Assembly: GCA_047495785.1 (NCBI GenBank)
Contig: JBLDXI010000127.1
Coordinates: 1 to 21,163, forward strand
Source: Lepidodermella squamata
Lineage: Eukaryota; Animalia; Gastrotricha
Direction: 5' to 3'
DNA length: 21,163 nucleotides
The position numbers were made by a program, and so were the translations under genes. Each line of letters begins with the position of its first letter. The stretch's first letter is position 1. Positions 1 through 21,163 of the stretch are shown one piece after another. The notes beneath the pieces were generated by a model. That model had not been told where the DNA came from, did not search any database, and worked only from the letters and a program-made list of their open reading frames with translations.

Positions 1-893
1 AATGGGGTCGGCTTGAAATTGCGGAGTTGCTGATGAATCGCGCCGCTAATAAAGAAGCGATAGATGACAAACAGGTAGCTACAAAAATTGCCATTCAAAT
101 ACCGAATTTTGGTTTAAAAGTTCAAAATTATGAAAACAAGAATATGAAATTTTGAAATTAAAATTAAAATATTTTGTCTCCAAGTTCTAAAATTCAAAGT
201 TTTGAAAAATTTCAGTTTTGATAACAAAATTTGATTTGACTATTCTTTTTTAATTTCAAAATTTTTTTACAGACTTTTTCAAATTTTGAAATTTGATTAA
301 ATTTGTGCATTTTCCAGCTTTATCGGCCTCTTCATCTAGCCGCCCGTCATCAACACCCTGACGTAGTCCAGCTATTTCTCGATCGAAGGGCAAACCCGTT
401 CGCCCAGGATGAATACGGTCACACGCCTCTGCACCTCGCAGTTCGCGAGGGCCAAAGTGGGGCCTCCTTGCTCGACGCAAGGCGATGGCGAGAGGCCGAA
501 GTCAAGGCCAAAACGGGGCTAGGCTCGAAAACTATCGAAGACGCGGTAACAGCCGGTCGTTGGGAGATGACTGAAGACATCCTACGCAGTACAATTTTGA
601 ACCAGTCGCCGGAAAAGCGACTCGATGAACCGTCACGGAAACAGAGCTTGGTCATTCACATGTTGCTAGACCATAGCCCGGATTTGCTATGCATCAAAAC
701 GAATAGGTTCGGCCGCACGGTTTTACACGTTGCGGCGCAGGCTGGCCAGTTGATGGCGTGCCAGACTTTGATATCGCGAGGGGCTGATCCGAGAGCTCGC
801 GACAAAATTGGCAAAACGCCGCTCAGACTGGCGTTTGACAACAGCAAATATGATATTGTTAGACTTTTTGTCAAACTCGGAATTCCTCAATAA
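1..893 (+). CDS. Ankyrin-repeat protein, 3' part (5' end outside window); exons <1-74 and 318-893
   Basis: Exon 3-74 reads WGRLEIAELLMNRAANKEAIDDKQ. A phase-0 GT..AG intron (75-317) joins it in frame to LYRPLHLAA. ANK motifs GHTPLHLAV, GRTVLHVAA and GKTPLRLA follow; stop at 891-893 with overlapping AATAAA. Confidence 0.9.
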
Positions 894-1300
894 AAACGCG
901 ATGATTAATAAATTGGTAGATAACTCAATAAAATAATTAATATTTAATAGTTTATTTTTTTATTAATTATTTTTCATCTCTTTCAAAAATGTTCTAAATT
1001 GGTCGATAATCGCTGAGGAGAAAGGCTATCCGAAAATCAGCCTTAATTGAAATGTAATGGCTCCTGATTGAATAAAGAAAACAAGGAATTATAGCAACGG
1101 TTGTAAAAGTGGGGAGAGTCTTTAGCTTTAGACGGGATGGCTGTTTTTCGAATCTGATCTTGACGAGTGATAAACCTTGAGTCTCAGTGAATTGTTCATT
1201 TTATTGTGTGTTTCACCTTTTTAGATTTCAAGAATGAAAAAATATTCGATTTAAACGTCGAATTTCGCATCTCTGTCTGTTAGGCTCGATTTTTTTTTAA

Positions 1301-1492
1301 AGAAGCTGCTAGAAATGAAAATCTTTATAATGAAGCTTTGTATAATGCTACAACGCGTTACGTTCTACAATCTCAGTATAATTCAAAAGGTGTCTAGCCA
1401 ACTGGTTCAGTGAGAGTACTGAGATTGTAGAACGTAACGCGTTGTAGCATTATACAAGCTTCATTATAAGATTTTCATTTCTAGCAGCTTCT
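1301..1492. repeat. Inverted repeat/hairpin, 78- and 76-bp arms with a 38-bp loop (MITE-like or hairpin RNA)
   Basis: 1301-1378 is the reverse complement of 1417-1492 apart from two extra T in T-runs of the left arm. No clear target-site duplication. Confidence 0.9.
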
Positions 1493-2212
1493 ACAATTAG
1501 AACGGCAAAAATGTGTGTTTTCTTTTGGAAAGTTTCATGCGCTATTTATGTCGTGGGGGTACAATTGACCTTTCGCGGAGACAGCTTTTGTAACTCGACG
1601 AAAATATGATAATATGAGCGCACTAAGTGCCCGAGTTAAGGTTACACCGTTTTGAAGACTAATTTGTGTACTACCTAATTAATGCTACTTGGATCATTTC
1701 CCGACAATAGGCCAGATTCAGGAACGCCCGAAATAATCCGATGATAAATGGTTTCATCGGGACTACTTCAAAACAGCTAGAGAAACAAAAGATCCAGAAA
1801 GAATAGGCAAAAAAATGATCGCAGAACCGCCGAAGCTAAAGGAAACAATGTGCGCGCGTCACATTGTCTCAATCATCAAGTTTATTGACCTAATGTAATC
1901 AAGAGATCGTCATTTTTTGTGGAATCGCAGTAGACCAAATTTTCGGCATTTTACCTGGCTTTTCCCGGACTATTTATTTTTTTGTCAAGTTGCGTGGTTG
2001 ATTATCAATTTTATATTTCGAAATCCCTCTGACCTTAAGATCGGACATACCGCACCATACTTGAGGATGCGGGATCCTGACCTCTGGTTTTAAATCGGCT
2101 GCGTTACTTACTAGAGATCAAACTTTCTTCAACCGTAATATGCTTTATTAAGAAAAAAAAACGCTGAAACATTCATATAAAGCAAAACATTCAGGTGAGA
2201 TCAAAACTGCGG

Positions 2213-2661
2213 TTAAAAGTAATTGCGGTTTTCCACTTTGAAGAAGCAGTTGTTGATCGCATTGTTGACGACGATTAGGCTCAGAATAACGTAAGGCACT
2301 GAAAGCTGAGATATCATCAAATTAGCGGTCTCAGCATACAAATAGTGGAACATGGGGAACAGCAGGGCCGTCGCAGCGACAGCAACGTGCATAGCGTAGA
2401 AGCATATCACTGGCCAGTTGAGCATCATTTTTGCAGTGGCCGCGCATTCATAATACAAACCTAAATAAATATATGCTTAGAGAAGTCAGGTAACTTGTAT
2501 AATGGTTGGCATAAGAGCTAAAAGCAAGAATGAACAATGCTGGTTCAATGTATGCACTATAAAATGTACTACAGAAATGCAATTTAACCTCGGAAAGATT
2601 CCTGGAAGGGTTATAGCTCTTTCGTTGTGGTTATAGGTATTAGGAATGAGGATGAAGGATA
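2213..2661 (-). CDS. Possible small multi-pass membrane protein; terminal exon 2460-2213, upstream exons uncertain
   Basis: Hydrophobic open frame 2458-2213 preceded by an acceptor (TTTATTTAG, ending 2461). An in-frame upstream model needs introns of 32 and 34 bp, shorter than the ~50 bp seen elsewhere. Start codon not identified. Confidence 0.35.
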
Positions 2662-3304
2662 CTAAAATGTGTTATTTGTAACATTTTGACTTCCAAGACA
2701 TGGAATGACACCACTTGGGCTGGCGTGCGACAGAGTTGATCCAGTTAGGACGACAAAAATCCAGTCGAATTAGAGGGTACTACTGGCAACTGCGTCTTAA
2801 CCACACGCAAGTTTGCTTGGAAAAAAACTGATTTCGTGACTGCCTTTCTCCCATCCCCTACGCTTCCCCGCCGCCGTACGCAGCTGGGCACGCTTGAATG
2901 TTTGACTCATCTGAGATTATAAGAGTGTTGTCGCTTGCTCCAGCTTTGGCATACATGTCATGCATATAATTACTACTAGGTATTTGTTTATGAAACCACG
3001 TGCACCGCTGTTGGATCCATTTCACTGTATTCAGATTAAAAAATACCTAGTAAAATACTATTAAAATGCTTTGGACACACCGTCAAGTCTCCCACCATCA
3101 TATTATTCGATGAAACGCTGGCAACCCAGTTTTTGAGCAGCCCAGCTTCTCATGCACATCTGCTGAAGGGTTTTTGCACCTAATTCGGCGAAGCTGTTGT
3201 ACGAAGTAACTGTTAAGTTTGCACGTTCAACGAATTAAGTCATCTGACAACAGAAGTTCGAGACATTTCTTTTATGAATTTATGGAGTGACAATTATCTA
3301 GCAT

Positions 3305-3996
3305 TTATTTGTTCATCAATCCCGCAAGTCTTCGCATTTCTTCCCTTCGACGTGCCAATCGGCGCTTTTTGTTGCGAGCTTTTATAGCTGCGGTGATGGC
3401 GAAATACAGACCCAGCGCAATGATGCGGAATAGGAAGAAGACAGACGTTGCGACCGACGATCCGAAAGCCAAACCATAGTGAACACCGTGAACTGCGAAT
3501 CTAATGCTCACTGCGATCATTGAAACGAAACCGGTGATAGAAGTGAGTAGGGTTGTAAGACCAGAAGTATAAGCAGCTGAAAAAGCTATCATACACTGAG
3601 CGACTGGATAATGAAACTGAACTCACCCTTATACCAAAGCTTGCAATCATCGACCAAACAGATGTAGATTGAAACGAAAGCAGCGACCATGACGTCGACT
3701 AGAATGAACGTAATCGCTATAGCGGCTCCGATTCTGAAGACAGCCAAGAGCATGTCATTCAAAGCATCACCTGAGCCGCCTTCATCCGCTGAGTGATCCA
3801 GAGACTTCGAATCAGCTCGTGGAGCAGAGACCAAAACAAGGATTGCGAAAACAGCTAAGCCGCTAGCTATGAGAAGATCAATCGACTTGGCGATGAAGCA
3901 ATAGATTCGAAACTTTTCACCTTCCTTTCGCTTTGCTTCTTCATCACCATCAGTAGAGCTAGATAGGCTCATCATATCAGCAGTTACGTGAGGCAT
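3305..3996 (-). CDS. Uncharacterised four-transmembrane protein, ~213 aa; exons 3996-3627 and 3576-3305
   Basis: A 50-bp phase-1 GTGAGT..TTTTCAG intron (3626-3577) joins the listed ORFs 3589-4038 and 3305-3592 in frame. Four hydrophobic segments and a basic C-tail. HYGLAF before TM4 loosely recalls claudin/PMP22-type proteins (weak inference). Confidence 0.75.
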
Positions 3997-4074
3997 TTTG
4001 ATAGTTCGAAATGAACCCCATGAAAAAGAAAAACTCAATTTTTTAAAAAATTAAGGCGGACGTTTTATTATTAT

Positions 4075-4412
4075 TCAACATAGATAGGAATCTTCAGTAC
4101 CATCTTGAACGCAAAATTTATAGCATGATAACTGAGCTTGAATGTTAACTCCACCCGCTGTTACAAAGCATGGGCACAGTCCAAATCGGCAGGTGTAGTT
4201 TCGCGTTAGCTTGTCAAAGTTGCACACCCGACCAACTTGATAGCAGTCTGAGCAAGGGCTGGAAAAACGCATTGGTTTTCCTTGATTATAAGCTTTAAAA
4301 ATCTGGCTCACCAATGTCGATGGGAGTTTGTTGGATCACCAAATAATGCATGGCCATAGCAGAAGGTGATTGAAATTATGCTGAGACATACAATATTCCA
4401 GAATACACGCAT
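4075..4412 (-). CDS. Small secreted cysteine-rich peptide, 94 aa; exons 4412-4312 and 4258-4075
   Basis: Signal-peptide-like N-terminus MRVFWNIVCLSIISITFCYG, a 53-bp phase-2 GTGAGC..TTTCCAG intron, 10 Cys in the mature part, and AATAAA just after the stop. Confidence 0.8.
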
Positions 4413-5300
4413 GATTTAAACTTAGTGTGAGTGTAAATAATAAGTTATCGCTCTTTTCGCTTTGTTTCTCTTTACCATTGCTCATGAGTTAAATCTTATC
4501 ACCCATTTATCATTCATGATAGCCTAGATATACAAGCTGGGATAAACTTGTCTCTGAGCAGCGGGATCAGATAACACATGAAAAGCAAAAAGCAATTTCG
4601 GCCCATGATCCGGGGGGAGAGATGGATTTTCGCAAATTGATTTTAATACAAGTTGTCTCAAGGGGCGGAAGATAACCGAGTATTAGCGGGTGCGACCTTA
4701 AGTACGCGTTGCTTATGCCAGCGCGTATATGCGTGTCAAGATTATTGATGCATGACGCATGAATCGTGTGTGACACTAATCAAACTTGTAAGTCGATCAA
4801 TCAGGATGCGGATTACCACGCCCGATGGTCAAAATAGAACTGCTGTATGCGGAAATAGAGCGATGAAAGCTGCATCCGAAGTTCAAGATTCACATTGATC
4901 GATATACATTCGGCCTTTTGACCGGTTTTTTAAACGCCATTGCACAATAAAATCACCGAAATTCGTCAGCGTTCCTTCACACTTTGAAATTATTTCCTGC
5001 GGAACTAGCAGTTAGACTCGGCCCATCGATTTATTTTTCTTCCTCTCCCTCTTGAGAATGCATGCAGTTAACAACATTGTCCTCTGACAGGAACAAAACC
5101 TATAGTCTCAAGTTTTTTGATCCGATAACGATAAGAAGACTGCGTAAAACCACTTTGTAAATGCGTCAGAGCAGCACTTGATCAGCAATTTTCCCTGGAA
5201 TTTTAGAAATAATTAGCCGATGACCTTGCCAAAAGAAGAGCAAATTTTTCTATTAAATTGTCGTCTTTTTAATAGATTTTCTTTCAATTTTTTATAATTA

Positions 5301-6547
5301 ATGGGCTTTCTGACGAATATATCCAGTAAGACGGCAAGTTTCTGCCCGGACGAGGCTAAAACCGACTGTCCTTTCCTAATTTTTCTGGTTCTGTATGGAG
5401 TCCCGATTATGAGTACCCTCGGCATCATCGGGAATGCGCTGAACTTCGTCATCTTGAAAGATTCACGGACTTTCAGATCCCCAACTTACGTATTTTTGAC
5501 CTTTCTTGCCGCAATTCAAATAGTCAACTTGACCGGTCAATTGTCTTTCACAATCCTAAATTGGCACCTAGCCAACTACCCAGAATGGACCCAGCCTATA
5601 TCAGCATACTTTGCATGGCCGCTGGCGTGTTGGGGCAGGACCCAGTCCGTCATTTTTACAGTAGCGTACACTGTCGAACGCTATATCTTCATTACAACGA
5701 ACAAAGCCTCGCAAAGCGACATTGTAGCGCTATTCGAGCAAAGAAAGAGAGCCCGTTACTACTGCTACGTCATAATGGCATTAGTAACTGTGGTAAATCT
5801 CCCGCGAATGGCAATGTTCGTCCTCCAGCCTTCGTTAAGATGCAACGAAAGCGAGGATTATATCGGTTTGGAAGACTATTTATTCTACTATTCATTGATC
5901 CGCTTCATGATTTACAACGTTGGAATATTGCTGGTTTTGATTGTTTTCAACGCGTTACTCATCGCTGCTGTTCACCGCGACTCCTTTCATCGGAAAATGG
6001 GCATTCCATTGCCTAAAAATTGCGCTAATCGACACCAGCATTACCTTACTCTAACTTTGATCCCTGCGACTTGTGCTACTGTTTTAGGAGAGATACCGGT
6101 AAGAAACTAAAAATTTGTTGAACATATTTACAAATTCGCTCATGTTAATAGATGACTATGATAAGTCCTATCAGCCGAATGCTCATATGGGACAGGTTTT
6201 TCGTCGTCGATGAGTCCTTAATGCGAAATGCAACATCCGGTGTTGTGATTCTCCTCTCAATCGAGTACAGCCTCAATTTCTTCATCTACTTTATTGGAAA
6301 CAGGCTGTTTCGGCGGACCCTCTTCCGAAAGTTCACGAAGAACCGAGGAGTGATGAGGAGACCCAGTACGTCAAGCTTCGAATCCCATTTATCAGCCAGC
6401 CACTTCCAGAAAAGACTTGACAGCGTTCTCTTGGAAAGCAGCATCAACGTTGTTTCGCCTAATACTAAATCGAGTGAAGAATCCACGAGTTTTTTCGACG
6501 ATATTAAGACAGACAGTAGTAGTAGAACATGTGGGACTCAAAATTGA
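5301..6547 (+). CDS. GPCR1: rhodopsin-class (class A) invertebrate peptide GPCR, FMRFamide-receptor-like group, 397 aa; exons 5301-6098 and 6152-6547
   Basis: TM1 LGIIGNALN, TM2 YVFLTFLA, TM3 TVERY, TM4 NLPR, TM7 SLNFFIY followed by helix-8 FRRTL. A 53-bp phase-0 GTAAGA..AATAG intron lies in TM6. Confidence 0.92.
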
Positions 6548-6956
6548 TCATGGATGAAATAAAGTGAAAGATGTCCTGCGGAGGATTGTAGTTTGAATTA
6601 GGTGTAACGAATTACACGCTCAATTTGTCTAATATTTCTCAGTTTTGGTGGGAATGCTAATTATGGTTTTTAATTTTTCGAATATTTACAGACCGTCTTG
6701 AAAAGGAAGTTTTCCAGTGCTCTAGATTATCCGCTTTCAAAGAAGATAGACTGCCGTTTCCTGTTTTATTTTCTACGTCCAGGTTTTACCACGCAGCATT
6801 GTGATGCATAATTCTCGCTTGAGTAAACTGATGAATACTAATCTTTATAAGACCACGCTACTACTTTCACCACGCCTGGCGAGAACACAATTGAATTCAA
6901 ATTATCACCACTTGAATAGAACGTTCTCTCCAGTATCTGAAAGTTGATTGTTATCT

Positions 6957-9509
6957 ATGAAATTTGACAATTCCTTTCTACTCGTAATTGCTGTAAAACA
7001 GGTGTGTGCCAGGGAGTTTACTGAGTTCTATGAATCTTCAGCTTTTGCTTCGCAGATTATTTATGCATTAACGGCCTCAGCAAACACTTGCCGTATTCCG
7101 GTGATAGAAAATGCAGTTTTCAGCTCGATTTCGGGCGAAAAGCTCTCTGCAGGTAACAAAGTTGTTTCTGGGACGATTGTCACGATAAAATGTCCAACGG
7201 ATTACCAACCTCGAGGAGCTGTTTGCTATCGGAATAACATCTGGCTACCGCCATTCGAGATATGTAAATCCGAATCTATCCAAGAAATGGTAGACTTTGC
7301 TCTGCTCCTATGATACACAGCTACCGTGTTTAATTTTAAAGGCTCCAGTTGAAGCTTTTTCAGCATGTTCCGGGTTTGTTTGCGCCAACAAAAAATGCAT
7401 ATCTGGCGCGTTCAGGTTAGCAAGAATCGACTTAAAAAAGCATTATACCCTGACATTCCGATAATTAGATGCGACGGCGATGATGACTGTGGTATGAAAA
7501 TTCCTGAAAGTTCCATTTCGTCAATCATTTCCACGCCCAGGTGATGGCAGTGACGAATTGAAATGCGGATCTGCTGAGTTGAACGCAAGTAATTTCTTGA
7601 CTGAAGTATCAACTAATTCGTGTCTGTTTCTTAGAAATGTGGATCCGACAAGTTTCCTTGTTTAGTGAGCAAACAATGCATCGACCGGCAATATGTGTTT
7701 CGTCTTTTAAATAAGCCTTTGAGACCGAGATAACCTTTTTCTTTATAGATGTGACTACGATTCTGACTGCGATGATGCTAGCGATGAAATTGGATGTTTT
7801 GAACGAGTTTTTGTAAGACAATTAAACCTTCGACTATTGGTATTATGATTTGCTTATCTAGGTAACAACCACAACAGCAGCAACAACAAAGAGAGCGCCG
7901 ATTTGCAGAGGTTTCACTTGCGCGAATGGTAAGTGCATAAATTCTACGAACGTATGCGATCGGAAGGACGATTGCGGCGACAGTAGCGAAGAGGAAAACT
8001 GCACCCTTACTACGTCGATCGCAAGCACGACCTTGAGAGCAGTAACTACGGTATTTAATTCGCTTATACTTATGATTATATGAATAACTTTTGAGTAATT
8101 TTAGCTACCCTCAAGGGCAGCAAATCGATGCTCAAATTTTGAATTCCAATGCGCGAATTCGAAATGCGTATCGATACTATACAGGTGAGGATTAAAGTTT
8201 TGATTTTTTCCCGGCAATTCTTAAAAAATTACTTAGATGCGATTCAGAAAACGATTGCGGAGACAACTCTGACGAAATAGGTTGCGCGGCCGAGGCCCGT
8301 CAGGTTACATTTTCAACCGCGCTGTAGATGACCAATTCATTTTCCCCATGCAGCCTCCAATTTGCAATGGATTTCGTTGCCGGTCCAGTGGCAAATGCAT
8401 ACAAAGGTTTAATCTCTGAAGTGCATTCTCTTTACATTCTGAAACTCTTCTGTTCTCTTAGCCCTTGGGTTTGCGACGGGGAGGGTTTGTTAAATTTGTA
8501 TTCACAAGTTCCTTTTTAACTTGGATCTTTCAAGAGGACTGCCCCGATGGGTCGGACGAGACAAACTGTCAAGCCACTACGACTAGATCGCGAACAGCGG
8601 CTAGAATGAGACCAACCACTCGGCAGCCTGGTCAAACAACGGTAACCCCGACATCATCCTGGAATTCAAGCCAATGTGGTGTTGTCCATATTCCTCGCAC
8701 GATTTTCGGTGGGTCATTTGCAACTCCGGGCGAATTCCCGTGGGTTGTCAAAATCTACACGAAATTCTCCGGGGCAAGCTCGCTGTCGGGATGTGGAGCA
8801 GCCTTGATATCCAACCAGTGGTTACTAACCGCCGCCCACTGCATAACGGATGACGAAAGAGGTGCCAGAATTGAATGGGTGAAAGCTCTTCTAGGTCGCT
8901 ACGACCTTTCAGCGCGCGATGAAGGCGGCGATGAGAAGAGGTCAACACAGGTTTTTCGACACCCAAACTACGACCAGAGCCGTAACTGGAACTACGACTT
9001 TGCGCTGATCAAACTCAGTTCAGTCGTTAATTTAAATGAAGCGATTCACCCGGTTTGTCTGCCTGATGAAACAAACTGCCAAAGCAGCGTATCTTCGACC
9101 TCAACCTCGATTGATGGCTGCGAGAATGTTGTAGTTGCAGGTTGGGGTAGAACGGAATGTAAGTCTCTACCTCTTCAAGTTTCATCCAATTTTTGAATTT
9201 TAAATCTTAGCTAATACCTCATCCCCCGTACTCAAAATGGCTGAACTGAACATCAATAGCCGTACAGCTTGCAACAGGGCTTACTCCGGTGGGTTATCAG
9301 ACGCTCAACTTTGCGTGGGCAATGGAAGCCCATCGACTTGTACTGGAGACAGCGGAGGACCGTTACTCTGCAAATCCGAGGGCAGAACCAGAGTTATCGG
9401 CGTTGTTTCATGGGGAGCGTCCCGTTGCGGTCTAGGCGGTGCTCCTTCGGTTTTCGCCCGCGTCTGCAGCGTCTTATCCTGGATTAAACAAACCATGGCC
9501 ACGAAATAA
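6957..9509 (+). CDS. SP1: secreted modular S1A serine protease (signal, Sushi/CCP, 5 LDLa, Thr/Arg-rich linker, protease), ~626 aa, 14 exons
   Basis: Exons 6957-7001, 7056-7289, 7342-7415, 7469-7491, 7541-7584, 7635-7696, 7749-7812, 7862-8050, 8105-8184, 8237-8303, 8354-8406, 8462-8484, 8535-9158 and 9211-9509 sum to 1881 nt in frame. Motifs: DCxDxSDE-type LDLa ends, IFGG, TAAHC, DFALIKL, GDSGGP. Confidence 0.9.
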
Positions 9510-9770
9510 TGTTTCTTAAATTGTTTTCAAGAATAAATTAAAGTTCCGGTCCTTTAATCTATTTTGCGGAAACTGCTGTACAGCTTGATATGACAAGTTT
9601 TAGAAGAACATGGATATTCCAATTTCGTGTTCAACTTCCAAGAAAAAAAATCTTTTTATGTGGATGAAAAATCTTCAACACGTATTTTTCACTACGGCGA
9701 ATAAAGTAGTAGTTGTAATGTCATACATGGTAAATTGCCCTGAATAGTGGTTATTGTTTTATTCCTGGCA

Positions 9771-12112
9771 ATGCAACGTGTTTTCATTTGTGTTATTGAT
9801 ATCCTGTTGATTCAGGTTTGGTTATCTTGCCAAATTCAAACGATCCATCATGATTTTTGTGCCCAGCTATCAGTGGGTGCTCGTTATCCATGCAATGGAT
9901 TCGTCTGTTCAAACCAGCGTTGTATAAAAGGAATTCAAAGGTTAGGCTTATCTTACGAATTCAGACTTTTTTCAAATCTTGAATTTATAATCAAGATGTG
10001 ACGGGGCTAATAACTGTGGTTGGCTGCAATTTAGGTGTATTTTGACCTATTTCTCCGATTTTTCACTAGGAGACGGAAGTGATGAACTCAGATGCAGCAT
10101 TCATGTGAGCATATAAATTCAAACTTAACACTCAGCTTACCTCCAATCTGGTTTAGGAATGTGGCGCCGATGAGTTTCCTTGCTTCAGAGGTACCAAATG
10201 TATCAACCGCAAATACGTGTAAGACAAGAATAATCTAGCATGGACTTTTATAATTGCTTGAAAAGGTGCGATTACTACCAGGATTGTCCAGATGGGAGCG
10301 ATGAAGTTGGTTGTTTCGAGCTGAGAGCAGTAGGCGCAGTAGGTTTAACGATCACTAGCAGGCTTTTCAATCCTGAAAATTCAGACAACTCGCAGAACAA
10401 CAACCGAACGACCAGTTTGCAAGGGCTTTTCATGCATGAATGGAGGTTGCATCAATGCTGCTTACGTCTGCGACAATGAAAACGATTGCGGCGACAGCAC
10501 TGATGAGATGAACTGCCGAACTTCGGCTTCCGAGACAACAACTTTGGCCCCCGTTAAAACCACGAGAACAAGAATAGTTAGCTTTCTATTTTTTGTAATT
10601 CGTAACATTTTCAACTACGCTTTCAGCAGACCACTACGTCTACAATGGCGCCATGCTCGATTTATGATTTCCAGTGCAAGAACTTCCGATGCATCTCTTC
10701 CTCGAAAAGGTTAACCGAAAAGATTTGTTTGCGATAAGTCATTCACGTCGTGGATTAGATGTGATTCCTATGATAACTGTGGAGACAACAGCGATGAGAC
10801 GGACTGCCCATCTATGCGTTGGACCACAAGAACAAGGCCAGTCACTTTAATTGCCTCAAATAAAGACACAGTTTGTTGAGCCATATGCACCACTGAATGT
10901 ATTGCATCCGTCTTTTTCCAGGCTTCAATCCCGTATTTATGCTCAATAGAACAATTCAAATGCGATAACTCGAAATGCGTACATCGGAATTTTAGGTCAG
11001 TTACAATTTTATGCTCAACTTCGTAATTATTTCATTAAATAAAGATGCGATGGTGATAACGATTGTGGAGACCATTCGGATGAGCAAAACTGTGGCCAGG
11101 TTCATTATCTTACAACAAGGAGTTTTGAGATTAAAAGAAATTCATAGATGGTCTGTGACGGCTTTCGCTGTACTTCAAATGGCCTCTGTATTCGCAAGTA
11201 AGTGTCCCCTTACTTAATTGGCCTTCCTAACGTATCATACTTATTAGATCTTGGGTTTGTGATGGTGACGGTTTGTTGTCTTGTAGATGCATAGGCCTGG
11301 CTCTATTTTGAGCTTATAAAAGGGGACTGCCCCGATTCCTCCGATGAGCGAAGTTGCAACCGAGTGTATGAATCGGATACAACTCGACGAACCACAACCA
11401 GCACCACACGAACGACTACTACGCAGACTAGCACTACCGAGCATACTACAACAACCAGACGAACTACAACTAGAAAACCCCCCACAACATCATCTGAAAG
11501 ACTTACTTCAACGATATCGTCGCAACCTAATGACCAATGCGGTACTACGGCGTTAAATCCAATCTATGGAGGGACCATTGCTAACCACGGCGACTTCCCT
11601 TGGGTAGTCAAAACTTACACCAAATTCTATGGCTCCGATTTGATGATTGGTTGCGGGGCGGCCCTCATTTCAGACCAATGGCTGCTGACAGCCGCCCATT
11701 GCATCACCGACAGAGTGAGGGACGCCCGGGTTGAATATGTCAGAGCTCTCATCGGCCGGCATGACCTCTCGCTTGGCGACGAAGGTGGGTATGACGTTCG
11801 AATCGAATCAGGTTTTCCGTCATCCAAGCTACGATGTCAAAAGATAACTGGAATCATGATTTTGCTCTGGTGAAGCTGAGCGCTCCTGTCATATTTCAGT
11901 CATTTATACAGCCCATCTGCCTGCCTGAAGCATCTACATGCCAGAGCACCATTTCGCCTACGGCTGACGTCTATCGATGGTTGTGAAAGAGTGATGGTTG
12001 CCGGATGGGGAAGGGACGGAGTTTGTAAGTTGAGCCTGAAATAAAAATCATCCGTTTGAACTCGCTATCTCATTTCGCAGCGAGTTACGACTCCGATGTG
12101 TTGCGAATGGCC
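9771..12112 (+). pseudogene. SP2 left-arm copy, frameshifted from ~11801 and truncated in its last exon (lacks the catalytic Ser)
   Basis: Matches the right-arm SP2 up to 11800, then shows six indels and breaks at 12112 after ...DVLRMA, before GDSGGP. May be an assembly artefact rather than a real pseudogene. Confidence 0.8.
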
Positions 12113-12573
12113 AAAATAACACCCAAACATCGCCGTTTTGCAGCATGCCGTTGCCTCGACAGAGCCAAAGTGTCGTTTTGTGAGATTCGATTTCTCGTTA
12201 TGAACACATACCTCTCGAGTGTAAGCGCGCATGTGAGAACAAATGATGTTGTTAATCCCCAAGTAGTAAGTGGCCATGAGATGTAATTCGAAATGAAGCG
12301 CAGCCATTCAACCTCTAAATCGCTTTGCCTGGCGATGATGAACAAGATTTGGCTGATATTATGCACGAGTTGCACAGCAGCCAATGCTGTTAAGTAAACG
12401 TAAGTAGGCGCTTTGAAGATCTTAGAATCTCGCATTATCGAAATGCTGAGTGAATTGTAAAAAAATGCGACAAAGACCAAGGGTGGGATGACATAATAAG
12501 ATATGGAGTCATAATACCCTCTTTGAACAATACAGTTGCTTGAATTGGATGTCTTGAAATCAACTATGGCCAT
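12085..12573 (-). pseudogene. GPCR2: paralogue of GPCR1, truncated in TM4 at the palindrome junction
   Basis: IMRDSKIFKAPTYVYLTALAAVQLV aligns with GPCR1 ILKDSRTFRSPTYVFLTFLAAIQIV, and TLERYVFIT with TVERYIFIT. After RCLGVILAI the frame runs into antisense SP2 sequence (RNTSES-stop). Confidence 0.88.
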
Positions 12574-12962
12574 TTTATTATATATTATTACAACTGCGCT
12601 TCTCTACTGGACGGTTTTTAGTAGATTTCTGTTTTGAATTGATGTGCGCAATCAAGATAGCTCGGTATATTTTTGGATCATCTTTGAACAGAAATCGATT
12701 AGTTTCTCGCCATTGTGTCTCTAATCCATGGAAGAACAGCGCAGACCCTGCTAAATACAGCGGGCGTTTCTAATCCACATCGCGCTGATCCCCAGGAAAC
12801 TACGCCTATTACTTTCGCTAGGCCTGAGGCGGTGCAAATCAACGGTCCTCCGCTATCACCGACACAAGTAGTAGGCCGTCCATCACCTACACAGATTTGA
12901 GCATCGGACAAAGTAATACCAAAGGCGTTGAGACAAGCTTCAGTGCTGTTTACTCTCATTTG
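12113..12962. other. Unique 850-bp spacer (loop) of the palindrome
   Basis: Arm identity stops at 12112/12963. The spacer carries most of the SP2 last exon and the GPCR2 5' part, both on the minus strand. Confidence 0.93.
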
Positions 12963-15299
12963 GGCCATTCGCAACACATCGGAGTCGTAACTCGCTGCGA
13001 AATGAAGATAGCGAGTTCAAACGGATGATTTTTATTTCAGGCTCAACTTACACTCCGTCCTTCCCCATCCGGCAACCATCACTCTTTCACAACCATCGAT
13101 AGACGTAGCCGTAGGCGAAATGGTGCTCTGGCATGTAGATGCTTCAGGCAGGCAGATGGGCTGTATAAATGACTGAAATATGACAGGAGCGCTCAGCTTC
13201 ACCAGAGCAAAATCATGATTCCAGTTATCTTTTACATCGTAGCTTGGATGACGGAAAACCTGATTCGATCGAACGTCATACCCACCTTCGTCGCCAAGCG
13301 AGAGGTCATGCCGGCCGATGAGAGCTCTGACATATTCAACCCGGGCGTCCCTCACTCTGTCGGTGATGCAATGGGCGGCTGTCAGCAGCCATTGGTCTGA
13401 AATGAGGGCCGCCCCGCAACCAATCATCAAATCGGAGCCATAGAATTTGGTGTAAGTTTTGACTACCCAAGGGAAGTCGCCGTGGTTAGCAATGGTCCCT
13501 CCATAGATTGGATTTAACGCCGTAGTACCGCATTGGTCATTAGGTTGCGACGATATCGTTGAAGTAAGTCTTTCAGATGATGTTGTGGGGGGTTTTCTAG
13601 TTGTAGTTCGTCTGGTTGTTGTAGTATGCTCGGTAGTGCTAGTCTGCGTAGTAGTCGTTCGTGTGGTGCTGGTTGTGGTTCGTCGAGTTGTATCCGATTC
13701 ATACACTCGGTTGCAACTTCGCTCATCGGAGGAATCGGGGCAGTCCCCTTTTATAAGCTCAAAATAGAGCCAGGCCTATGCATCTACAAGACAACAAACC
13801 GTCACCATCACAAACCCAAGATCTAATAAGTATGATACGTTAGGAAGGCCAATTAAGTAAGGGGACACTTACTTGCGAATACAGAGGCCATTTGAAGTAC
13901 AGCGAAAGCCGTCACAGACCATCTATGAATTTCTTTTAATCTCAAAACTCCTTGTTGTAAGATAATGAACCTGGCCACAGTTTTGCTCATCCGAATGGTC
14001 TCCACAATCGTTATCACCATCGCATCTTTATTTAATGAAATAATTACGAAGTTGAGCATAAAATTGTAACTGACCTAAAATTCCGATGTACGCATTTCGA
14101 GTTATCGCATTTGAATTGTTCTATTGAGCATAAATACGGGATTGAAGCCTGGAAAAAGACGGATGCAATACATTCAGTGGTGCATATGGCTCAACAAACT
14201 GTGTCTTTATTTGAGGCAATTAAAGTGACTGGCCTTGTTCTTGTGGTCCAACGCATAGATGGGCAGTCCGTCTCATCGCTGTTGTCTCCACAGTTATCAT
14301 AGGAATCACATCTAATCCACGACGTGAATGACTTATCGCAAACAAATCTTTTCGGTTAACCTTTTCGAGGAAGAGATGCATCGGAAGTTCTTGCACTGGA
14401 AATCATAAATCGAGCATGGCGCCATTGTAGACGTAGTGGTCTGCTGAAAGCGTAGTTGAAAATGTTACGAATTACAAAAAATAGAAAGCTAACTATTCTT
14501 GTTCTCGTGGTTTTAACGGGGGCCAAAGTTGTTGTCTCGGAAGCCGAAGTTCGGCAGTTCATCTCATCAGTGCTGTCGCCGCAATCGTTTTCATTGTCGC
14601 AGACGTAAGCAGCATTGATGCAACCTCCATTCATGCATGAAAAGCCCTTGCAAACTGGTCGTTCGGTTGTTGTTCTGCGAGTTGTCTGAATTTTCAGGAT
14701 TGAAAAGCCTGCTAGTGATCGTTAAACCTACTGCGCCTACTGCTCTCAGCTCGAAACAACCAACTTCATCGCTCCCATCTGGACAATCCTGGTAGTAATC
14801 GCACCTTTTCAAGCAATTATAAAAGTCCATGCTAGATTATTCTTGTCTTACACGTATTTGCGGTTGATACATTTGGTACCTCTGAAGCAAGGAAACTCAT
14901 CGGCGCCACATTCCTAAACCAGATTGGAGGTAAGCTGAGTGTTAAGTTTGAATTTATATGCTCACATGAATGCTGCATCTGAGTTCATCACTTCCGTCTC
15001 CTAGTGAAAAATCGGAGAAATAGGTCAAAATACACCTAAATTGCAGCCAACCACAGTTATTAGCCCCGTCACATCTTGATTATAAATTCAAGATTTGAAA
15101 AAAGTCTGAATTCGTAAGATAAGCCTAACCTTTGAATTCCTTTTATACAACGCTGGTTTGAACAGACGAATCCATTGCATGGATAACGAGCACCCACTGA
15201 TAGCTGGGCACAAAAATCATGATGGATCGTTTGAATTTGGCAAGATAACCAAACCTGAATCAACAGGATATCAATAACACAAATGAAAACACGTTGCAT
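12699..15299 (-). CDS. SP2 intact copy: secreted modular S1A serine protease (signal, 6 LDLa, Thr-rich mucin-like linker, protease), ~627 aa, 15 exons
   Basis: The 13 upstream exons mirror 9771-11270, followed by 13747-13052 and 12994-12699; total 1884 nt in frame. Motifs: IYGG, TAAHC, DFALVKL, GDSGGP. Confidence 0.9.
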
Positions 15300-15560
15300 T
15301 GCCAGGAATAAAACAATAACCACTATTCAGGGCAATTTACCATGTATGACATTACAACTACTACTTTATTCGCCGTAGTGAAAAATACGTGTTGAAGATT
15401 TTTCATCCACATAAAAAGATTTTTTTTCTTGGAAGTTGAACACGAAATTGGAATATCCATGTTCTTCTAAAACTTGTCATATCAAGCTGTACAGCAGTTT
15501 CCGCAAAATAGATTAAAGGACCGGAACTTTAATTTATTCTTGAAAACAATTTAAGAAACA

Positions 15561-18113
15561 TTATTTCGTGGCCATGGTTTGTTTAATCCAGGATAAGACG
15601 CTGCAGACGCGGGCGAAAACCGAAGGAGCACCGCCTAGACCGCAACGGGACGCTCCCCATGAAACAACGCCGATAACTCTGGTTCTGCCCTCGGATTTGC
15701 AGAGTAACGGTCCTCCGCTGTCTCCAGTACAAGTCGATGGGCTTCCATTGCCCACGCAAAGTTGAGCGTCTGATAACCCACCGGAGTAAGCCCTGTTGCA
15801 AGCTGTACGGCTATTGATGTTCAGTTCAGCCATTTTGAGTACGGGGGATGAGGTATTAGCTAAGATTTAAAATTCAAAAATTGGATGAAACTTGAAGAGG
15901 TAGAGACTTACATTCCGTTCTACCCCAACCTGCAACTACAACATTCTCGCAGCCATCAATCGAGGTTGAGGTCGAAGATACGCTGCTTTGGCAGTTTGTT
16001 TCATCAGGCAGACAAACCGGGTGAATCGCTTCATTTAAATTAACGACTGAACTGAGTTTGATCAGCGCAAAGTCGTAGTTCCAGTTACGGCTCTGGTCGT
16101 AGTTTGGGTGTCGAAAAACCTGTGTTGACCTCTTCTCATCGCCGCCTTCATCGCGCGCTGAAAGGTCGTAGCGACCTAGAAGAGCTTTCACCCATTCAAT
16201 TCTGGCACCTCTTTCGTCATCCGTTATGCAGTGGGCGGCGGTTAGTAACCACTGGTTGGATATCAAGGCTGCTCCACATCCCGACAGCGAGCTTGCCCCG
16301 GAGAATTTCGTGTAGATTTTGACAACCCACGGGAATTCGCCCGGAGTTGCAAATGACCCACCGAAAATCGTGCGAGGAATATGGACAACACCACATTGGC
16401 TTGAATTCCAGGATGATGTCGGGGTTACCGTTGTTTGACCAGGCTGCCGAGTGGTTGGTCTCATTCTAGCCGCTGTTCGCGATCTAGTCGTAGTGGCTTG
16501 ACAGTTTGTCTCGTCCGACCCATCGGGGCAGTCCTCTTGAAAGATCCAAGTTAAAAAGGAACTTGTGAATACAAATTTAACAAACCCTCCCCGTCGCAAA
16601 CCCAAGGGCTAAGAGAACAGAAGAGTTTCAGAATGTAAAGAGAATGCACTTCAGAGATTAAACCTTTGTATGCATTTGCCACTGGACCGGCAACGAAATC
16701 CATTGCAAATTGGAGGCTGCATGGGGAAAATGAATTGGTCATCTACAGCGCGGTTGAAAATGTAACCTGACGGGCCTCGGCCGCGCAACCTATTTCGTCA
16801 GAGTTGTCTCCGCAATCGTTTTCTGAATCGCATCTAAGTAATTTTTTAAGAATTGCCGGGAAAAAATCAAAACTTTAATCCTCACCTGTATAGTATCGAT
16901 ACGCATTTCGAATTCGCGCATTGGAATTCAAAATTTGAGCATCGATTTGCTGCCCTTGAGGGTAGCTAAAATTACTCAAAAGTTATTCATATAATCATAA
17001 GTATAAGCGAATTAAATACCGTAGTTACTGCTCTCAAGGTCGTGCTTGCGATCGACGTAGTAAGGGTGCAGTTTTCCTCTTCGCTACTGTCGCCGCAATC
17101 GTCCTTCCGATCGCATACGTTCGTAGAATTTATGCACTTACCATTCGCGCAAGTGAAACCTCTGCAAATCGGCGCTCTCTTTGTTGTTGCTGCTGTTGTG
17201 GTTGTTACCTAGATAAGCAAATCATAATACCAATAGTCGAAGGTTTAATTGTCTTACAAAAACTCGTTCAAAACATCCAATTTCATCGCTAGCATCATCG
17301 CAGTCAGAATCGTAGTCACATCTATAAAGAAAAAGGTTATCTCGGTCTCAAAGGCTTATTTAAAAGACGAAACACATATTGCCGGTCGATGCATTGTTTG
17401 CTCACTAAACAAGGAAACTTGTCGGATCCACATTTCTAAGAAACAGACACGAATTAGTTGATACTTCAGTCAAGAAATTACTTGCGTTCAACTCAGCAGA
17501 TCCGCATTTAAATTCGTCACTGCCATCACCTGGGCGTGGAAATGATTGACGAAATGGAACTTTCAGGAATTTTCATACCACAGTCATCATCGCCGTCGCA
17601 TCTAATTATCGGAATGTCAGGGTATAATGCTTTTTTAAGTCGATTCTTGCTAACCTGAACGCGCCAGATATGCATTTTTTGTTGGCGCAAACAAACCCGG
17701 AACATGCTGAAAAAGCTTCAACTGGAGCCTTTAAAATTAAACACGGTAGCTGTGTATCATAGGAGCAGAGCAAAGTCTACCATTTCTTGGATAGATTCGG
17801 ATTTACATATCTCGAATGGCGGTAGCCAGATGTTATTCCGATAGCAAACAGCTCCTCGAGGTTGGTAATCCGTTGGACATTTTATCGTGACAATCGTCCC
17901 AGAAACAACTTTGTTACCTGCAGAGAGCTTTTCGCCCGAAATCGAGCTGAAAACTGCATTTTCTATCACCGGAATACGGCAAGTGTTTGCTGAGGCCGTT
18001 AATGCATAAATAATCTGCGAAGCAAAAGCTGAAGATTCATAGAACTCAGTAAACTCCCTGGCACACACCTGTTTTACAGCAATTACGAGTAGAAAGGAAT
18101 TGTCAAATTTCAT
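15561..18113 (-). CDS. SP1 right-arm copy (Sushi + 5 LDLa + serine protease)
   Basis: Mirror of 6957-9509. One noticed substitution, 17510 vs 7560, changes SDELKC to SDEFKC. Confidence 0.9.
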
Positions 18114-18522
18114 AGATAACAATCAACTTTCAGATACTGGAGAGAACGTTCTATTCAAGTGGTGATAATTTGAATTCAATTGTGTTCTCGCCAGGCGTGG
18201 TGAAAGTAGTAGCGTGGTCTTATAAAGATTAGTATTCATCAGTTTACTCAAGCGAGAATTATGCATCACAATGCTGCGTGGTAAAACCTGGACGTAGAAA
18301 ATAAAACAGGAAACGGCAGTCTATCTTCTTTGAAAGCGGATAATCTAGAGCACTGGAAAACTTCCTTTTCAAGACGGTCTGTAAATATTCGAAAAATTAA
18401 AAACCATAATTAGCATTCCCACCAAAACTGAGAAATATTAGACAAATTGAGCGTGTAATTCGTTACACCTAATTCAAACTACAATCCTCCGCAGGACATC
18501 TTTCACTTTATTTCATCCATGA

Positions 18523-19769
18523 TCAATTTTGAGTCCCACATGTTCTACTACTACTGTCTGTCTTAATATCGTCGAAAAAACTCGTGGATTCTTCACTCGA
18601 TTTAGTATTAGGCGAAACAACGTTGATGCTGCTTTCCAAGAGAACGCTGTCAAGTCTTTTCTGGAAGTGGCTGGCTGATAAATGGGATTCGAAGCTTGAC
18701 GTACTGGGTCTCCTCATCACTCCTCGGTTCTTCGTGAACTTTCGGAAGAGGGTCCGCCGAAACAGCCTGTTTCCAATAAAGTAGATGAAGAAATTGAGGC
18801 TGTACTCGATTGAGAGGAGAATCACAACACCGGATGTTGCATTTCGCATTAAGGACTCATCGACGACGAAAAACCTGTCCCATATGAGCATTCGGCTGAT
18901 AGGACTTATCATAGTCATCTATTAACATGAGCGAATTTGTAAATATGTTCAACAAATTTTTAGTTTCTTACCGGTATCTCTCCTAAAACAGTAGCACAAG
19001 TCGCAGGGATCAAAGTTAGAGTAAGGTAATGCTGGTGTCGATTAGCGCAATTTTTAGGCAATGGAATGCCCATTTTCCGATGAAAGGAGTCGCGGTGAAC
19101 AGCAGCGATGAGTAACGCGTTGAAAACAATCAAAACCAGCAATATTCCAACGTTGTAAATCATGAAGCGGATCAATGAATAGTAGAATAAATAGTCTTCC
19201 AAACCGATATAATCCTCGCTTTCGTTGCATCTTAACGAAGGCTGGAGGACGAACATTGCCATTCGCGGGAGATTTACCACAGTTACTAATGCCATTATGA
19301 CGTAGCAGTAGTAACGGGCTCTCTTTCTTTGCTCGAATAGCGCTACAATGTCGCTTTGCGAGGCTTTGTTCGTTGTAATGAAGATATAGCGTTCGACAGT
19401 GTACGCTACTGTAAAAATGACGGACTGGGTCCTGCCCCAACACGCCAGCGGCCATGCAAAGTATGCTGATATAGGCTGGGTCCATTCTGGGTAGTTGGCT
19501 AGGTGCCAATTTAGGATTGTGAAAGACAATTGACCGGTCAAGTTGACTATTTGAATTGCGGCAAGAAAGGTCAAAAATACGTAAGTTGGGGATCTGAAAG
19601 TCCGTGAATCTTTCAAGATGACGAAGTTCAGCGCATTCCCGATGATGCCGAGGGTACTCATAATCGGGACTCCATACAGAACCAGAAAAATTAGGAAAGG
19701 ACAGTCGGTTTTAGCCTCGTCCGGGCAGAAACTTGCCGTCTTACTGGATATATTCGTCAGAAAGCCCAT
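18523..19769 (-). CDS. GPCR1 right-arm copy; exons 19769-18972 and 18918-18523
   Basis: Translations identical to those of 5301-6547. Confidence 0.92.
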
Positions 19770-20657
19770 TAATTATAAAAAATTGAAAGAAAATCTATTA
19801 AAAAGACGACAATTTAATAGAAAAATTTGCTCTTTTTTTGGCAAGGTCATCGGCTAATTATTTCTAAAATTCCAGGGAAAATTGCTGATCAAGTGCTGCT
19901 CTGACGCATTTACAAAGTGGTTTTACGCAGTCTTCTTATCGTTATCGGATCAAAAAACTTGAGACTATAGGTTTTGTTCCTGTCAGAGGACAATGTTGTT
20001 AACTGCATGCATTCTCAAGAGGGAGAGGAAGAAAAATAAATCGATGGGCCGAGTCTAACTGCTAGTTCCGCAGGAAATAATTTCAAAGTGTGAAGGAACG
20101 CTGACGAATTTCGGTGATTTTATTGTGCAATGGCGTTTAAAAAACCGGTCAAAAGGCCGAATGTATATCGATCAATGTGAATCTTGAACTTCGGATGCAG
20201 CTTTCATCGCTCTATTTCCGCATACAGCAGTTCTATTTTGACCATCGGGCGTGGTAATCCGCATCCTGATTGATCGACTTACAAGTTTGATTAGTGTCAC
20301 ACACGATTCATGCGTCATGCATCAATAATCTTGACACGCATATACGCGCTGGCATAAGCAACGCGTACTTAAGGTCGCACCCGCTAATACTCGGTTATCT
20401 TCCGCCCCTTGAGACAACTTGTATTAAAATCAATTTGCGAAAATCCATCTCTCCCCCCGGATCATGGGCCGAAATTGCTTTTTGCTTTTCATGTGTTATC
20501 TGATCCCGCTGCTCAGAGACAAGTTTATCCCAGCTTGTATATCTAGGCTATCATGAATGATAAATGGGTGATAAGATTTAACTCATGAGCAATGGTAAAG
20601 AGAAACAAAGCGAAAAGAGCGATAACTTATTATTTACACTCACACTAAGTTTAAATC

Positions 20658-20995
20658 ATGCGTGTATTCTGGAATATTGTATGTCTCAGCATAATTTCAA
20701 TCACCTTCTGCTATGGCCATGCATTATTTGGTGATCCAACAAACTCCCATCGACATTGGTGAGCCAGATTTTTAAAGCTTATAATCAAGGAAAACCAATG
20801 CGTTTTTCCAGCCCTTGCTCAGACTGCTATCAAGTTGGTCGGGTGTGCAACTTTGACAAGCTAACGCGAAACTACACCTGCCGATTTGGACTGTGCCCAT
20901 GCTTTGTAACAGCGGGTGGAGTTAACATTCAAGCTCAGTTATCTTGCTATAAATTTTGCGTTCAAGATGGTACTGAAGATTCCTATCTATGTTGA
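20658..20995 (+). CDS. Secreted 10-Cys peptide, right-arm copy; exons 20658-20758 and 20812-20995
   Basis: Mirror of 4075-4412 with the same intron and translation. Confidence 0.8.
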
Positions 20996-21076
20996 ATAAT
21001 AATAATAAAACGTCCGCCTTAATTTTTAAAAAAATGGAGTTTTTCTTTTTCATGTGGTTTATTTCGAACTATCAAA

Positions 21077-21163
21077 ATGCCTCACGTAACTGCTGATATG
21101 ATGAGCCTATCGAGCTCTACTGATGGTGATGAAGAAGCAAAGCGAAAGGAAGGTGAAAAGTTT
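21077..21163 (+). CDS. 5' start of the four-TM protein, right-arm copy (runs off window)
   Basis: Reads MPHVTADMMSLSSSTDGDEEAKRKEGEKF; mirror of 3996-3910. Confidence 0.75.
   Translation, partial: MPHVTADMMSLSSSTDGDEEAKRKEGEKF

What the first reader, a model, noticed from the sequence alone, without database searches (positions are those of the whole stretch)
12100..12970. Fold-back junction with inverted microhomology reveals how the palindrome formed
Seen: on the minus strand the locus is continuous and intact (SP1, SP2, GPCR2) down to ~12113, then switches to the complement of the SP2 last exon. 12106-12117 (AATGGCCAAAAT) pairs 11/12 with 12958-12969 (ATTTGGGCCATT). Four of these matches (12114-12117) lie beyond the arm end, and the overlapping codons VILAI still fit TM4 (GPCR1 has VIMAL). 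Inference: a 3' end inside GPCR2 annealed to a short inverted repeat ~850 nt back on its own strand and was extended, so the left arm is the fold-back copy.
Basis: partly seen in the sequence, partly recalled or inferred. Interest (0 to 1): 0.75.

Follow-up and report, generated by a model that had tools for sequence, protein, structure and literature searches.

The report
Fold-back chimera from genome amplification
The 8-kb palindrome and its 11-base inverted microhomology are really in this contig, but the same locus lies un-inverted on a 1.5-Mb contig and nine of ten read-sized orphan contigs of the assembly are built the same way, so it is almost certainly a test-tube strand-switching artefact of whole-genome amplification and not a feature of the animal's genome.

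Summary
Observation confirmed. The window is a whole 21,163-bp orphan contig (C127) with inverted arms 3910-12117 / 12958-21163 around an 840-nt spacer. Native GPCR2 reads ATTTTGGCCAT at the junction, so the inverted microhomology with the SP2 last exon is real: 10 of 11 bases, chance about 2.5e-5. The setting, however, is very probably in vitro. C127 duplicates C26: the right part is 100% identical over 9,057 nt. Its two arms carry different haplotype alleles. The 316 nt next to the junction carry six frame-breaking indels. The contig has no second junction and no telomere. Nine of ten contigs of 13.5-23.7 kb that I could examine are the same kind of fold-back, each with an un-inverted counterpart on a Mb-scale contig. 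The assembly statistics fit the published Lepidodermella squamata genome, made from one animal by phi29 multiple displacement amplification. That method is known to give inverted chimeras at 2-21-nt complementarities. The scan has noted many other fold-backs in this genome. Low interest, except as an assembly-quality warning.

The parts
1..3909 (+). Unique left flank (ankyrin-repeat gene, small membrane-protein ORFs). It is the allelic version of C26:1020853-1024761 read in reverse, about 3.5% diverged between about 500 and 4126, mostly substitutions.
   Evidence: the only relative in the genome is C26, 96%; Pfam Ank
3910..12117 (+). Left arm of the palindrome: reverse complement of native C26:1012647-1020852. 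Carries GPCR1, SP1 and SP2 (LDLa repeats plus trypsin domain).
11801..12113 (+). Noisy stretch of the left arm next to the junction: 5 insertions, 1 deletion and the C-to-A change relative to both the right arm and C26. It breaks the SP2 reading frame (ORF 11364-11873 runs out of frame after ...GGYDVR).
12107..12117 (.). The only chimeric junction: ATGGCCAAAAT, shared by both alignments. Identical to native GPCR2 (C26:1011796-1011806) and 10/11 to the reverse complement of the SP2-exon site.
12118..12957 (-). Spacer: native single-copy sequence (5' part of GPCR2, intergenic DNA, most of the SP2 last exon), 100% identical to C26:1011807-1012646.
12958..12968 (.). Partner of the microhomology (ATTTGGGCCAT) inside the SP2 last exon (codons M-A-Q-M on the minus strand). 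Not a breakpoint, only the place where native sequence starts to be mirrored by the left arm.
12958..21163 (-). Right arm: native orientation, 100% identical to C26. It runs to the contig end, so there is no outer junction.
12085..12573 (-). GPCR2 exon 1, cut by the junction after ...RRCLGVILAI. The native gene on C26 runs on (217-aa exon plus further exons).
12699..12977 (-). SP2 last exon (C-terminal part of the trypsin domain, GDSGGP active-site motif).
13032..13706 (-). SP2 exon with a Thr-rich linker and the N-terminal part of the trypsin domain; intact copy.
5301..6547 (+). GPCR1 (rhodopsin-type, Srw/Srsx-like receptor), paralogue of GPCR2 (40% identity in exon 1).

Best explanation
C127 is a leftover assembly contig built around one or a few chimeric long reads. 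It is not a structure of the animal's chromosome. During phi29 multiple displacement amplification, a nascent minus-sense strand of the SP2-GPCR2 locus ended, or was displaced, inside GPCR2 with the 3' end ...ATTTTGGCCAT. This end annealed to ATGGCCCAAAT, 840 nt behind it, either on the same strand (snap-back) or on a sister displaced strand of the same sense. The pairing was 6 perfect 3'-terminal pairs, one T:C mismatch, then 4 more pairs. The polymerase then extended the end and re-copied SP2, SP1 and GPCR1 in inverted orientation. The chimeric molecule was sequenced. In the assembly graph it linked the locus to its own reverse complement, and ordinary reads extended both sides. The result is a 21-kb orphan contig. 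Shown: the anatomy, the native counterpart, the microhomology and which version the junction keeps, the haplotype mosaic, and the systematic occurrence. Inferred: that the switch happened in vitro, the identity of the assembly, and the read-level make-up of the contig.
For: (1) The native un-inverted locus is on the 1.49-Mb contig C26. Window 12107-21163 matches it at 100% over 9,057 nt, and window 1-12117 matches its reverse complement. C127 therefore adds nothing but the junction and an allelic 4 kb. (2) The junction has 10/11 inverted homology already present in the native sequence, P about 2.5e-5 for a random join. It is the nearest of only two such sites within 10 kb. (3) The arms are not copies of one molecule. 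They differ at 7 sites 7991-8156 nt from the junction and at 2 further sites. At all of these the right arm equals C26 and the left arm carries the alleles of the about 3.5%-diverged flank. (4) Five insertions and one deletion lie within 316 nt of the junction on one arm only, breaking the SP2 frame. No substitutions accompany them, apart from the C-to-A at the microhomology mismatch itself. This fits uncorrected read error where only the chimeric read gives support. (5) The contig is 1.6 mean read lengths long, and both ends lie in ordinary coding DNA. There is no telomere and no second junction. (6) The pattern is systematic. C114, C120, C134, C136, C138, C143, C147 and C151 (13.5-22.7 kb) are all arm-spacer-arm fold-backs centred near mid-contig. 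In every case the stretch searched has a counterpart on a Mb-scale contig; the three searched across the turn (C134, C138, C147) align to theirs un-inverted. Their spacers are 265-1,366 nt where measured. The three junctions resolved show 14, 14 and about 97 nt of overlap. Only C125 is not a fold-back. (7) G000 has 151 contigs and 121.2 Mb, the window GC is about 42-43%, and allelic divergence is about 3.5%. The L. squamata assembly of PMC11660948 has 157 contigs, 122.8 Mb, GC 43.3% and heterozygosity 2.99%. It was made from one animal with the REPLI-g MDA kit, 13.4-kb HiFi reads and hifiasm. Its chimera screen removed only reads whose two ends map to different contigs, so it is blind to fold-backs. 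(8) In MDA, 85% of chimeras are inverted, mostly less than 10 kb apart, and primed at 2-21 nt of complementarity (PMC1855051). 40-50% of PacBio reads from amplified Arabidopsis DNA are palindromic, against 0.5% without amplification (PMC6218980).
Against: No reads were available, so junction read support and arm copy number are untested. The identity of G000 with the MDA-based L. squamata assembly rests on near-matching statistics (151 vs 157 contigs) and on unchecked notes of this scan, not on a sequence match. In-vivo fold-back duplications have the same anatomy: spacer 766 bp to 70 kb and 2-8-bp or repeat-sized inverted homology (PMC3907307). The junction alone therefore cannot tell the two apart. 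The authors' own Alvis screen reported no chimeric contig in this species. Why the indel noise lies only on the left-arm side of the junction is not explained without reads.
Confidence: 0.87

Rival explanations
1. A real inverted duplication in the animal (germline-heterozygous or somatic). It would have formed in vivo by the fold-back route: a break in GPCR2, resection, intrastrand annealing at the 11-nt inverted repeat, then fill-in or replication. A replicative template switch (FoSTeS/MMBIR) is an alternative route.
For: The anatomy is exactly that of in-vivo fold-backs: single-copy spacer plus inverted microhomology (PMC3907307). The left flank belongs to the haplotype that is not in C26, so C127 could in principle be the other allele. 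Indels near a junction recall error-prone break-induced replication (my own knowledge, not tested).
Against: The arms carry different haplotypes at 9 sites, which a single-chromosome fold-back does not predict. An allele at half depth should assemble far beyond 21 kb and reach a second junction or a healed end, but the contig stops inside the right arm in coding DNA, without a telomere. About 2% indels with no substitutions is far above any reported replication error rate and looks like read noise. Nine read-sized orphan contigs share the same build, each with a normal counterpart on a large contig. As real variants these would require many independent heterozygous fold-backs, none of them placed in a chromosome.
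Confidence: 0.07
2. A pure assembler mis-join: no chimeric molecule existed, and the assembly graph joined the two orientations of the locus at the short inverted repeat.
For: The outer limits of the arms and both contig ends seem to be set by graph structure. The divergence switch at 4126 mirrors to within 216 nt of the right contig end. Arm sequence away from the junction is error-free, like ordinary corrected reads.
Against: Overlap assemblers for long reads need kilobase overlaps, as far as I know, and an 11-nt imperfect repeat cannot create an edge. The junction-proximal 316 nt differ from every native copy by indels, so they come from a distinct read that really crosses the junction. The other fold-back contigs also switch at 14-nt homologies, which is the signature of polymerase priming, not of graph errors.
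Confidence: 0.04
3. A sequencing-platform palindrome: a missed SMRTbell adapter, so that both strands of one insert are read as a single read.
For: Such reads exist at about 0.5% in unamplified PacBio data (PMC6218980) and also give read-sized palindromic contigs.
Against: That artefact turns at the physical end of the insert and leaves no single-copy spacer. Here there is an 840-nt native spacer and the turn sits on a pre-existing inverted microhomology. The other fold-back contigs also have spacers, 265-1,366 nt where measured.
Confidence: 0.01

Closest known systems
Inverted chimeras of phi29 multiple displacement amplification (Lasken and Stockwell 2007, PMC1855051); palindromic long reads after whole-genome amplification (Pacasus, PMC6218980)
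   Same: The second segment is inverted. The two segments lie less than 1 kb apart in the native genome. Priming occurred at a short complementary stretch (11 nt with one mismatch, within the reported 2-21 nt). The product is a read-sized palindrome, and many such products occur in one data set.
   Different: Here the chimera survived into a published-quality primary assembly as a separate contig. It was also extended by normal reads of two haplotypes, so the contig's arms are longer than any single chimeric molecule need have been.
In-vivo fold-back inverted duplications (Hermetz et al. 2014, PMC3907307); breakage-fusion-bridge and ODIRA-type inverted amplifications (PMC4689423, PMC10766183, seen only)
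   Same: Single-copy spacer between the inverted copies, inverted microhomology at the spacer/duplication boundary, and self-annealing of a 3' end followed by extension.
   Different: No terminal deletion, telomere healing or second junction; the arms are of different haplotypes; the normal locus is present in the same assembly; the junction-proximal sequence is noisy; the same build recurs in most read-sized orphan contigs.
Palindromes reported in the first Adineta vaga (bdelloid rotifer) assembly and later attributed to assembly error
   Same: Palindromic contigs in the assembly of a microscopic, asexually reproducing animal invite a biological reading (ameiotic genome structure).
   Different: Different organism and technology. 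Here the un-inverted locus in the same assembly resolves the matter directly.

Membership tests
MDA (phi29) fold-back chimera | Second segment inverted relative to the first, both from the same small genomic neighbourhood (less than 10 kb apart) | tested here: met
   Window 1-12117 = reverse complement of C26:1012647-1024761; window 12107-21163 = C26:1011796-1020852. The switch points are 840 nt apart.
MDA (phi29) fold-back chimera | Short complementarity (2-21 nt) between the 3' end and the new template at the junction | tested here: met
   ATGGCCAAAAT vs ATGGCCCAAAT, 10/11, present in native DNA; P about 2.5e-5 by simulation.
MDA (phi29) fold-back chimera | The DNA that was sequenced had been amplified by MDA | tested here: inconclusive
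   G000 (151 contigs, 121.2 Mb) nearly matches the MDA-based L. squamata assembly (157 contigs, 122.8 Mb, GC 43.3%, heterozygosity 2.99%). No sequence-level proof of identity was possible.
MDA (phi29) fold-back chimera | Many independent chimeras of the same type in the same data set | tested here: met
   9 of 10 contigs of 13.5-23.7 kb examined across the middle are fold-backs at different loci.
MDA (phi29) fold-back chimera | Junction absent from unamplified DNA, or supported by few clonal reads | not testable with these tools
   No reads and no bench.
In-vivo fold-back inverted duplication | Single-copy spacer and inverted microhomology at the spacer/duplication boundary | tested here: met
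   This feature is shared with the in-vitro artefact, so it does not discriminate.
In-vivo fold-back inverted duplication | Both arms derive from one chromosome (identical alleles apart from later mutation) | tested here: not met
   The arms differ at 9 sites where the right arm equals C26 and the left arm carries the other haplotype.
In-vivo fold-back inverted duplication | Outer end of the duplication resolved: terminal deletion with telomere, translocation junction or second junction | tested here: not met
   The right arm runs off the contig in coding DNA; no TTAGGG repeats.
Missed-adapter (SMRTbell) palindromic read | Palindrome without a spacer, turning at the insert end | tested here: not met
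   840-nt native spacer.

The most novel reading that the evidence does not exclude
The fold-backs are real. On this reading, the parthenogenetic microscopic animal carries, in germline or soma, many young inverted duplications seeded at 11-14-nt inverted repeats or MITE ends. The assembler could not place them because each coexists with the normal allele. That would point to frequent break-induced snap-back repair in an asexual lineage.
Probability: 0.05. Interest if true: 0.65.

Novelty: not a real feature. Interest (0 to 1): 0.12.

Why it matters
As biology it does not matter. The palindrome, the truncated GPCR2 and the frameshifted SP2 copy should not be annotated or interpreted as gene duplication, pseudogenisation or genome instability. 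As quality control it does matter. The assembly's small contigs are dominated by fold-back chimeras, which the published screen could not see because it used read ends mapping to different contigs. The many palindromes that this scan has flagged elsewhere in this genome (rDNA, satellites, transposons) should therefore be read with the same suspicion. The case is also a clean worked example of junction logic: the retained primer base at a mismatched microhomology gives the direction of a strand switch.

Tried and rejected
I used own-genome searches of 4-kb stretches instead. (3) A paper search for '151 contigs' plus 'rotifer' found nothing. The rotifer lead came from the Atlas neighbours of GPCR1 and probably only reflects the lack of gastrotrich proteins there. 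(4) I tried to prove the species through its published microRNAs. The main text holds no sequences, so I dropped this. (5) Rfam scan of the window: no match. Telomere repeat search: none. (6) The large protein searches were not used. (8) I considered and rejected the idea that the indels at 11801-12070 are alleles of the second haplotype. Four separate 1-nt insertions in a coding exon, with no accompanying substitutions beyond the one at the microhomology mismatch, do not look like allelic variation, and the neighbouring 7.7 kb show only 2-3 substitutions.
Full report
WHAT IS THERE. The window is a complete contig, C127, of 21,163 bp. It belongs to a 121.2-Mb assembly of 151 contigs. It contains one large inverted repeat. 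The arms are 3910-12117 and 12958-21163, with an 840-nt spacer at 12118-12957. The right arm runs to the last base of the contig. On the minus strand of the right half the genes are colinear: SP1 and SP2 are two LDLa-repeat/Thr-rich-linker/trypsin proteases, and a rhodopsin-type receptor, GPCR2, follows them. The left arm carries the mirrored copy together with GPCR1, and beyond it lie a membrane-protein ORF and an ankyrin gene.

The spacer occurs a second time in the assembly, on the 1.49-Mb contig C26. I fetched 40 kb around it and aligned it to the window. Window 12107-21163 equals C26:1011796-1020852 with no mismatch in 9,057 nt. Window 1-12117 is the reverse complement of C26:1012647-1024761 at 98.4%. 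C26 therefore holds the ordinary, un-inverted locus, and the two alignments overlap by 11 nt (12107-12117).

Native GPCR2 reads, on its sense strand...GGTGTT ATTTTGGCCAT AACC.... The homology is ATGGCC[A/C]AAAT, 10 of 11. The twelfth base (12106) is not native GPCR2. In 200,000 simulated inverted joins on the native 40 kb, homology this long with at most one mismatch occurred at 2.5e-5. For a 3' end at this GPCR2 site, only two sites within 10 kb offer it, and the nearer one was used.

Native GPCR2 is an intact paralogue of GPCR1 (40% identity in exon 1). It continues ...GVILAITIFNLPRMLAF... past the break.

DIRECTION. The junction carries A at 12113, the GPCR2 version, whereas the SP2-exon site has C. 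In primed synthesis the primer's bases are kept. The opposite order would need the proofreading exonuclease to remove five bases. That is possible but less simple (inference).

WHY THIS IS NOT A GENOMIC PALINDROME. There are five lines of evidence.

- Redundancy. Apart from the junction, C127 contains nothing that C26 lacks. The one exception is a 4-kb stretch that is about 3.5% diverged from C26, mostly by substitutions. This stretch has C26 as its only relative in the genome, so it is the other allele.
- Haplotype mosaic. The two arms differ at seven sites 7,991-8,156 nt from the junction and at two more sites. At all nine the right arm equals C26 and the left arm carries the diverged-allele state. 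A fold-back of one molecule gives identical arms. A contig stitched from reads of two haplotypes around a chimeric read gives this mosaic.
- Local noise. Relative to both C26 and the right arm, the last 316 nt of the left arm carry five insertions and one deletion and no substitution other than the microhomology mismatch itself. This is about 2% error inside a contig that is otherwise exact, and it destroys the SP2 frame. I read this as a stretch supported only by the chimeric read and left uncorrected (inference).
- Contig ends. The contig is about 1.6 read lengths long, and both ends fall in ordinary coding DNA without telomere repeats or a second junction. The change from 3.5% to about 0.03% divergence at 4126 mirrors to within 216 nt of the right contig end. 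This suggests that both ends are set by a heterozygous bubble of the assembly graph, not by the molecule.
- Systematic occurrence, which decides the matter. I sampled the first 10 kb of 20 other small contigs. Three had a fold-back inside those 10 kb. Own-genome searches showed that each of the three aligns un-inverted to a Mb-scale contig, with the two alignments overlapping by 14, about 97 (a multicopy MITE-like repeat) and 14 nt. Of six more contigs tested with a 4-kb probe near their middle, five (C114, C120, C136, C143, C151) matched themselves in reverse at 100% a few hundred bases further on, and each probe also matched a large contig at 90-100%. Only C125 did not match itself. Including C127, 9 of 10 contigs of 13.5-23.7 kb are arm-spacer-arm fold-backs centred near mid-contig.

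THE LIKELY SOURCE. Other agents' notes in this scan name the gastrotrich Lepidodermella squamata as the probable organism (unchecked leads). The published genome of that species (PMC11660948) has the following properties.

- It came from one animal amplified with the REPLI-g phi29 kit.
- It was sequenced as 13.4-kb HiFi reads and assembled with hifiasm.
- After decontamination it has 157 contigs, 122.8 Mb and GC 43.3%, with heterozygosity of 2.99%.

G000 has 151 contigs and 121.2 Mb. The window has about 42-43% GC and about 3.5% allelic divergence. This is a near match, not a proof.

That paper screened for chimeras by removing reads whose two 500-bp ends map to different contigs. A fold-back read has both ends on the same contig and passes. 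Lasken and Stockwell (PMC1855051) showed that 85% of MDA chimeras are inverted, mostly less than 10 kb apart, and primed at 2-21 nt of complementarity. Warris et al. (PMC6218980) found 40-50% palindromic PacBio reads after amplification, against 0.5% without. Every feature of C127 fits this class.

WHAT REMAINS OPEN. In-vivo fold-back duplications have the same junction anatomy (PMC3907307), and I had no reads. Junction support and arm copy number are therefore untested. The side-specific noise is unexplained in detail (notebook). I put 0.87 on the amplification artefact, 0.07 on a real variant, 0.04 on a graph-only mis-join and 0.01 on a missed adapter.

The big protein searches were not used. 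Nothing in the contig looks human.

VERDICT. The strand-switch mechanism and its direction are supported. The event is very probably a test-tube product preserved by the assembler. It has low biological interest but is a useful warning for every palindrome reported from this genome.

Noticed in passing
G000 contigs C114, C120, C134, C136, C138, C143, C147, C151 (L013, L016, L025, L026, L027, L029, L030, L031): Eight further orphan contigs of 13.5-22.7 kb are fold-back palindromes. Spacers are 265-1,366 nt where measured, and the searched stretch of each has a counterpart on a Mb-scale contig (C1, C32, C42, C17, C33, C15, C55, C3). The published screen reported no chimeric contig.
   Followed up: partly
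L027:3808-3904 and 4619-4715 (C138): This fold-back turns at a pre-existing inverted repeat of about 97 nt belonging to a short multicopy element (dozens of 85-95% hits of about 100 nt across many contigs), probably MITE ends. Such elements seem to be preferred snap-back sites.
   Followed up: partly
window:1301-1492: Small nested hairpin (arms of 25 nt and 41 nt, 38-nt loop) in non-coding DNA. The surrounding 500 nt are the most diverged from the C26 allele (46 differences, about half of them indels).
   Followed up: no
window:500-4126 versus 4127-11800: Allelic divergence from C26 drops abruptly from about 3.5% to about 0.03%. This may be a tract of lost heterozygosity in the parthenogenetic animal, or a change of read haplotype inside the contig.
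   Followed up: partly
window:7900-9509 and 10277-12020 (mirrored at 13032-17115): Two tandem genes encode proteases with several LDL-receptor class A-like Cys repeats, a Thr/Arg-rich mucin-like linker and a trypsin domain. Each is followed by a rhodopsin-type receptor gene of the same subfamily (GPCR1, GPCR2), so the pair protease plus GPCR appears to have been duplicated as a unit.
   Followed up: partly
G000:C26:978834-979440: A further GPCR2-like copy (73-84% nucleotide identity to parts of the spacer) lies 33 kb away on C26, so the receptor family is locally expanded.
   Followed up: no
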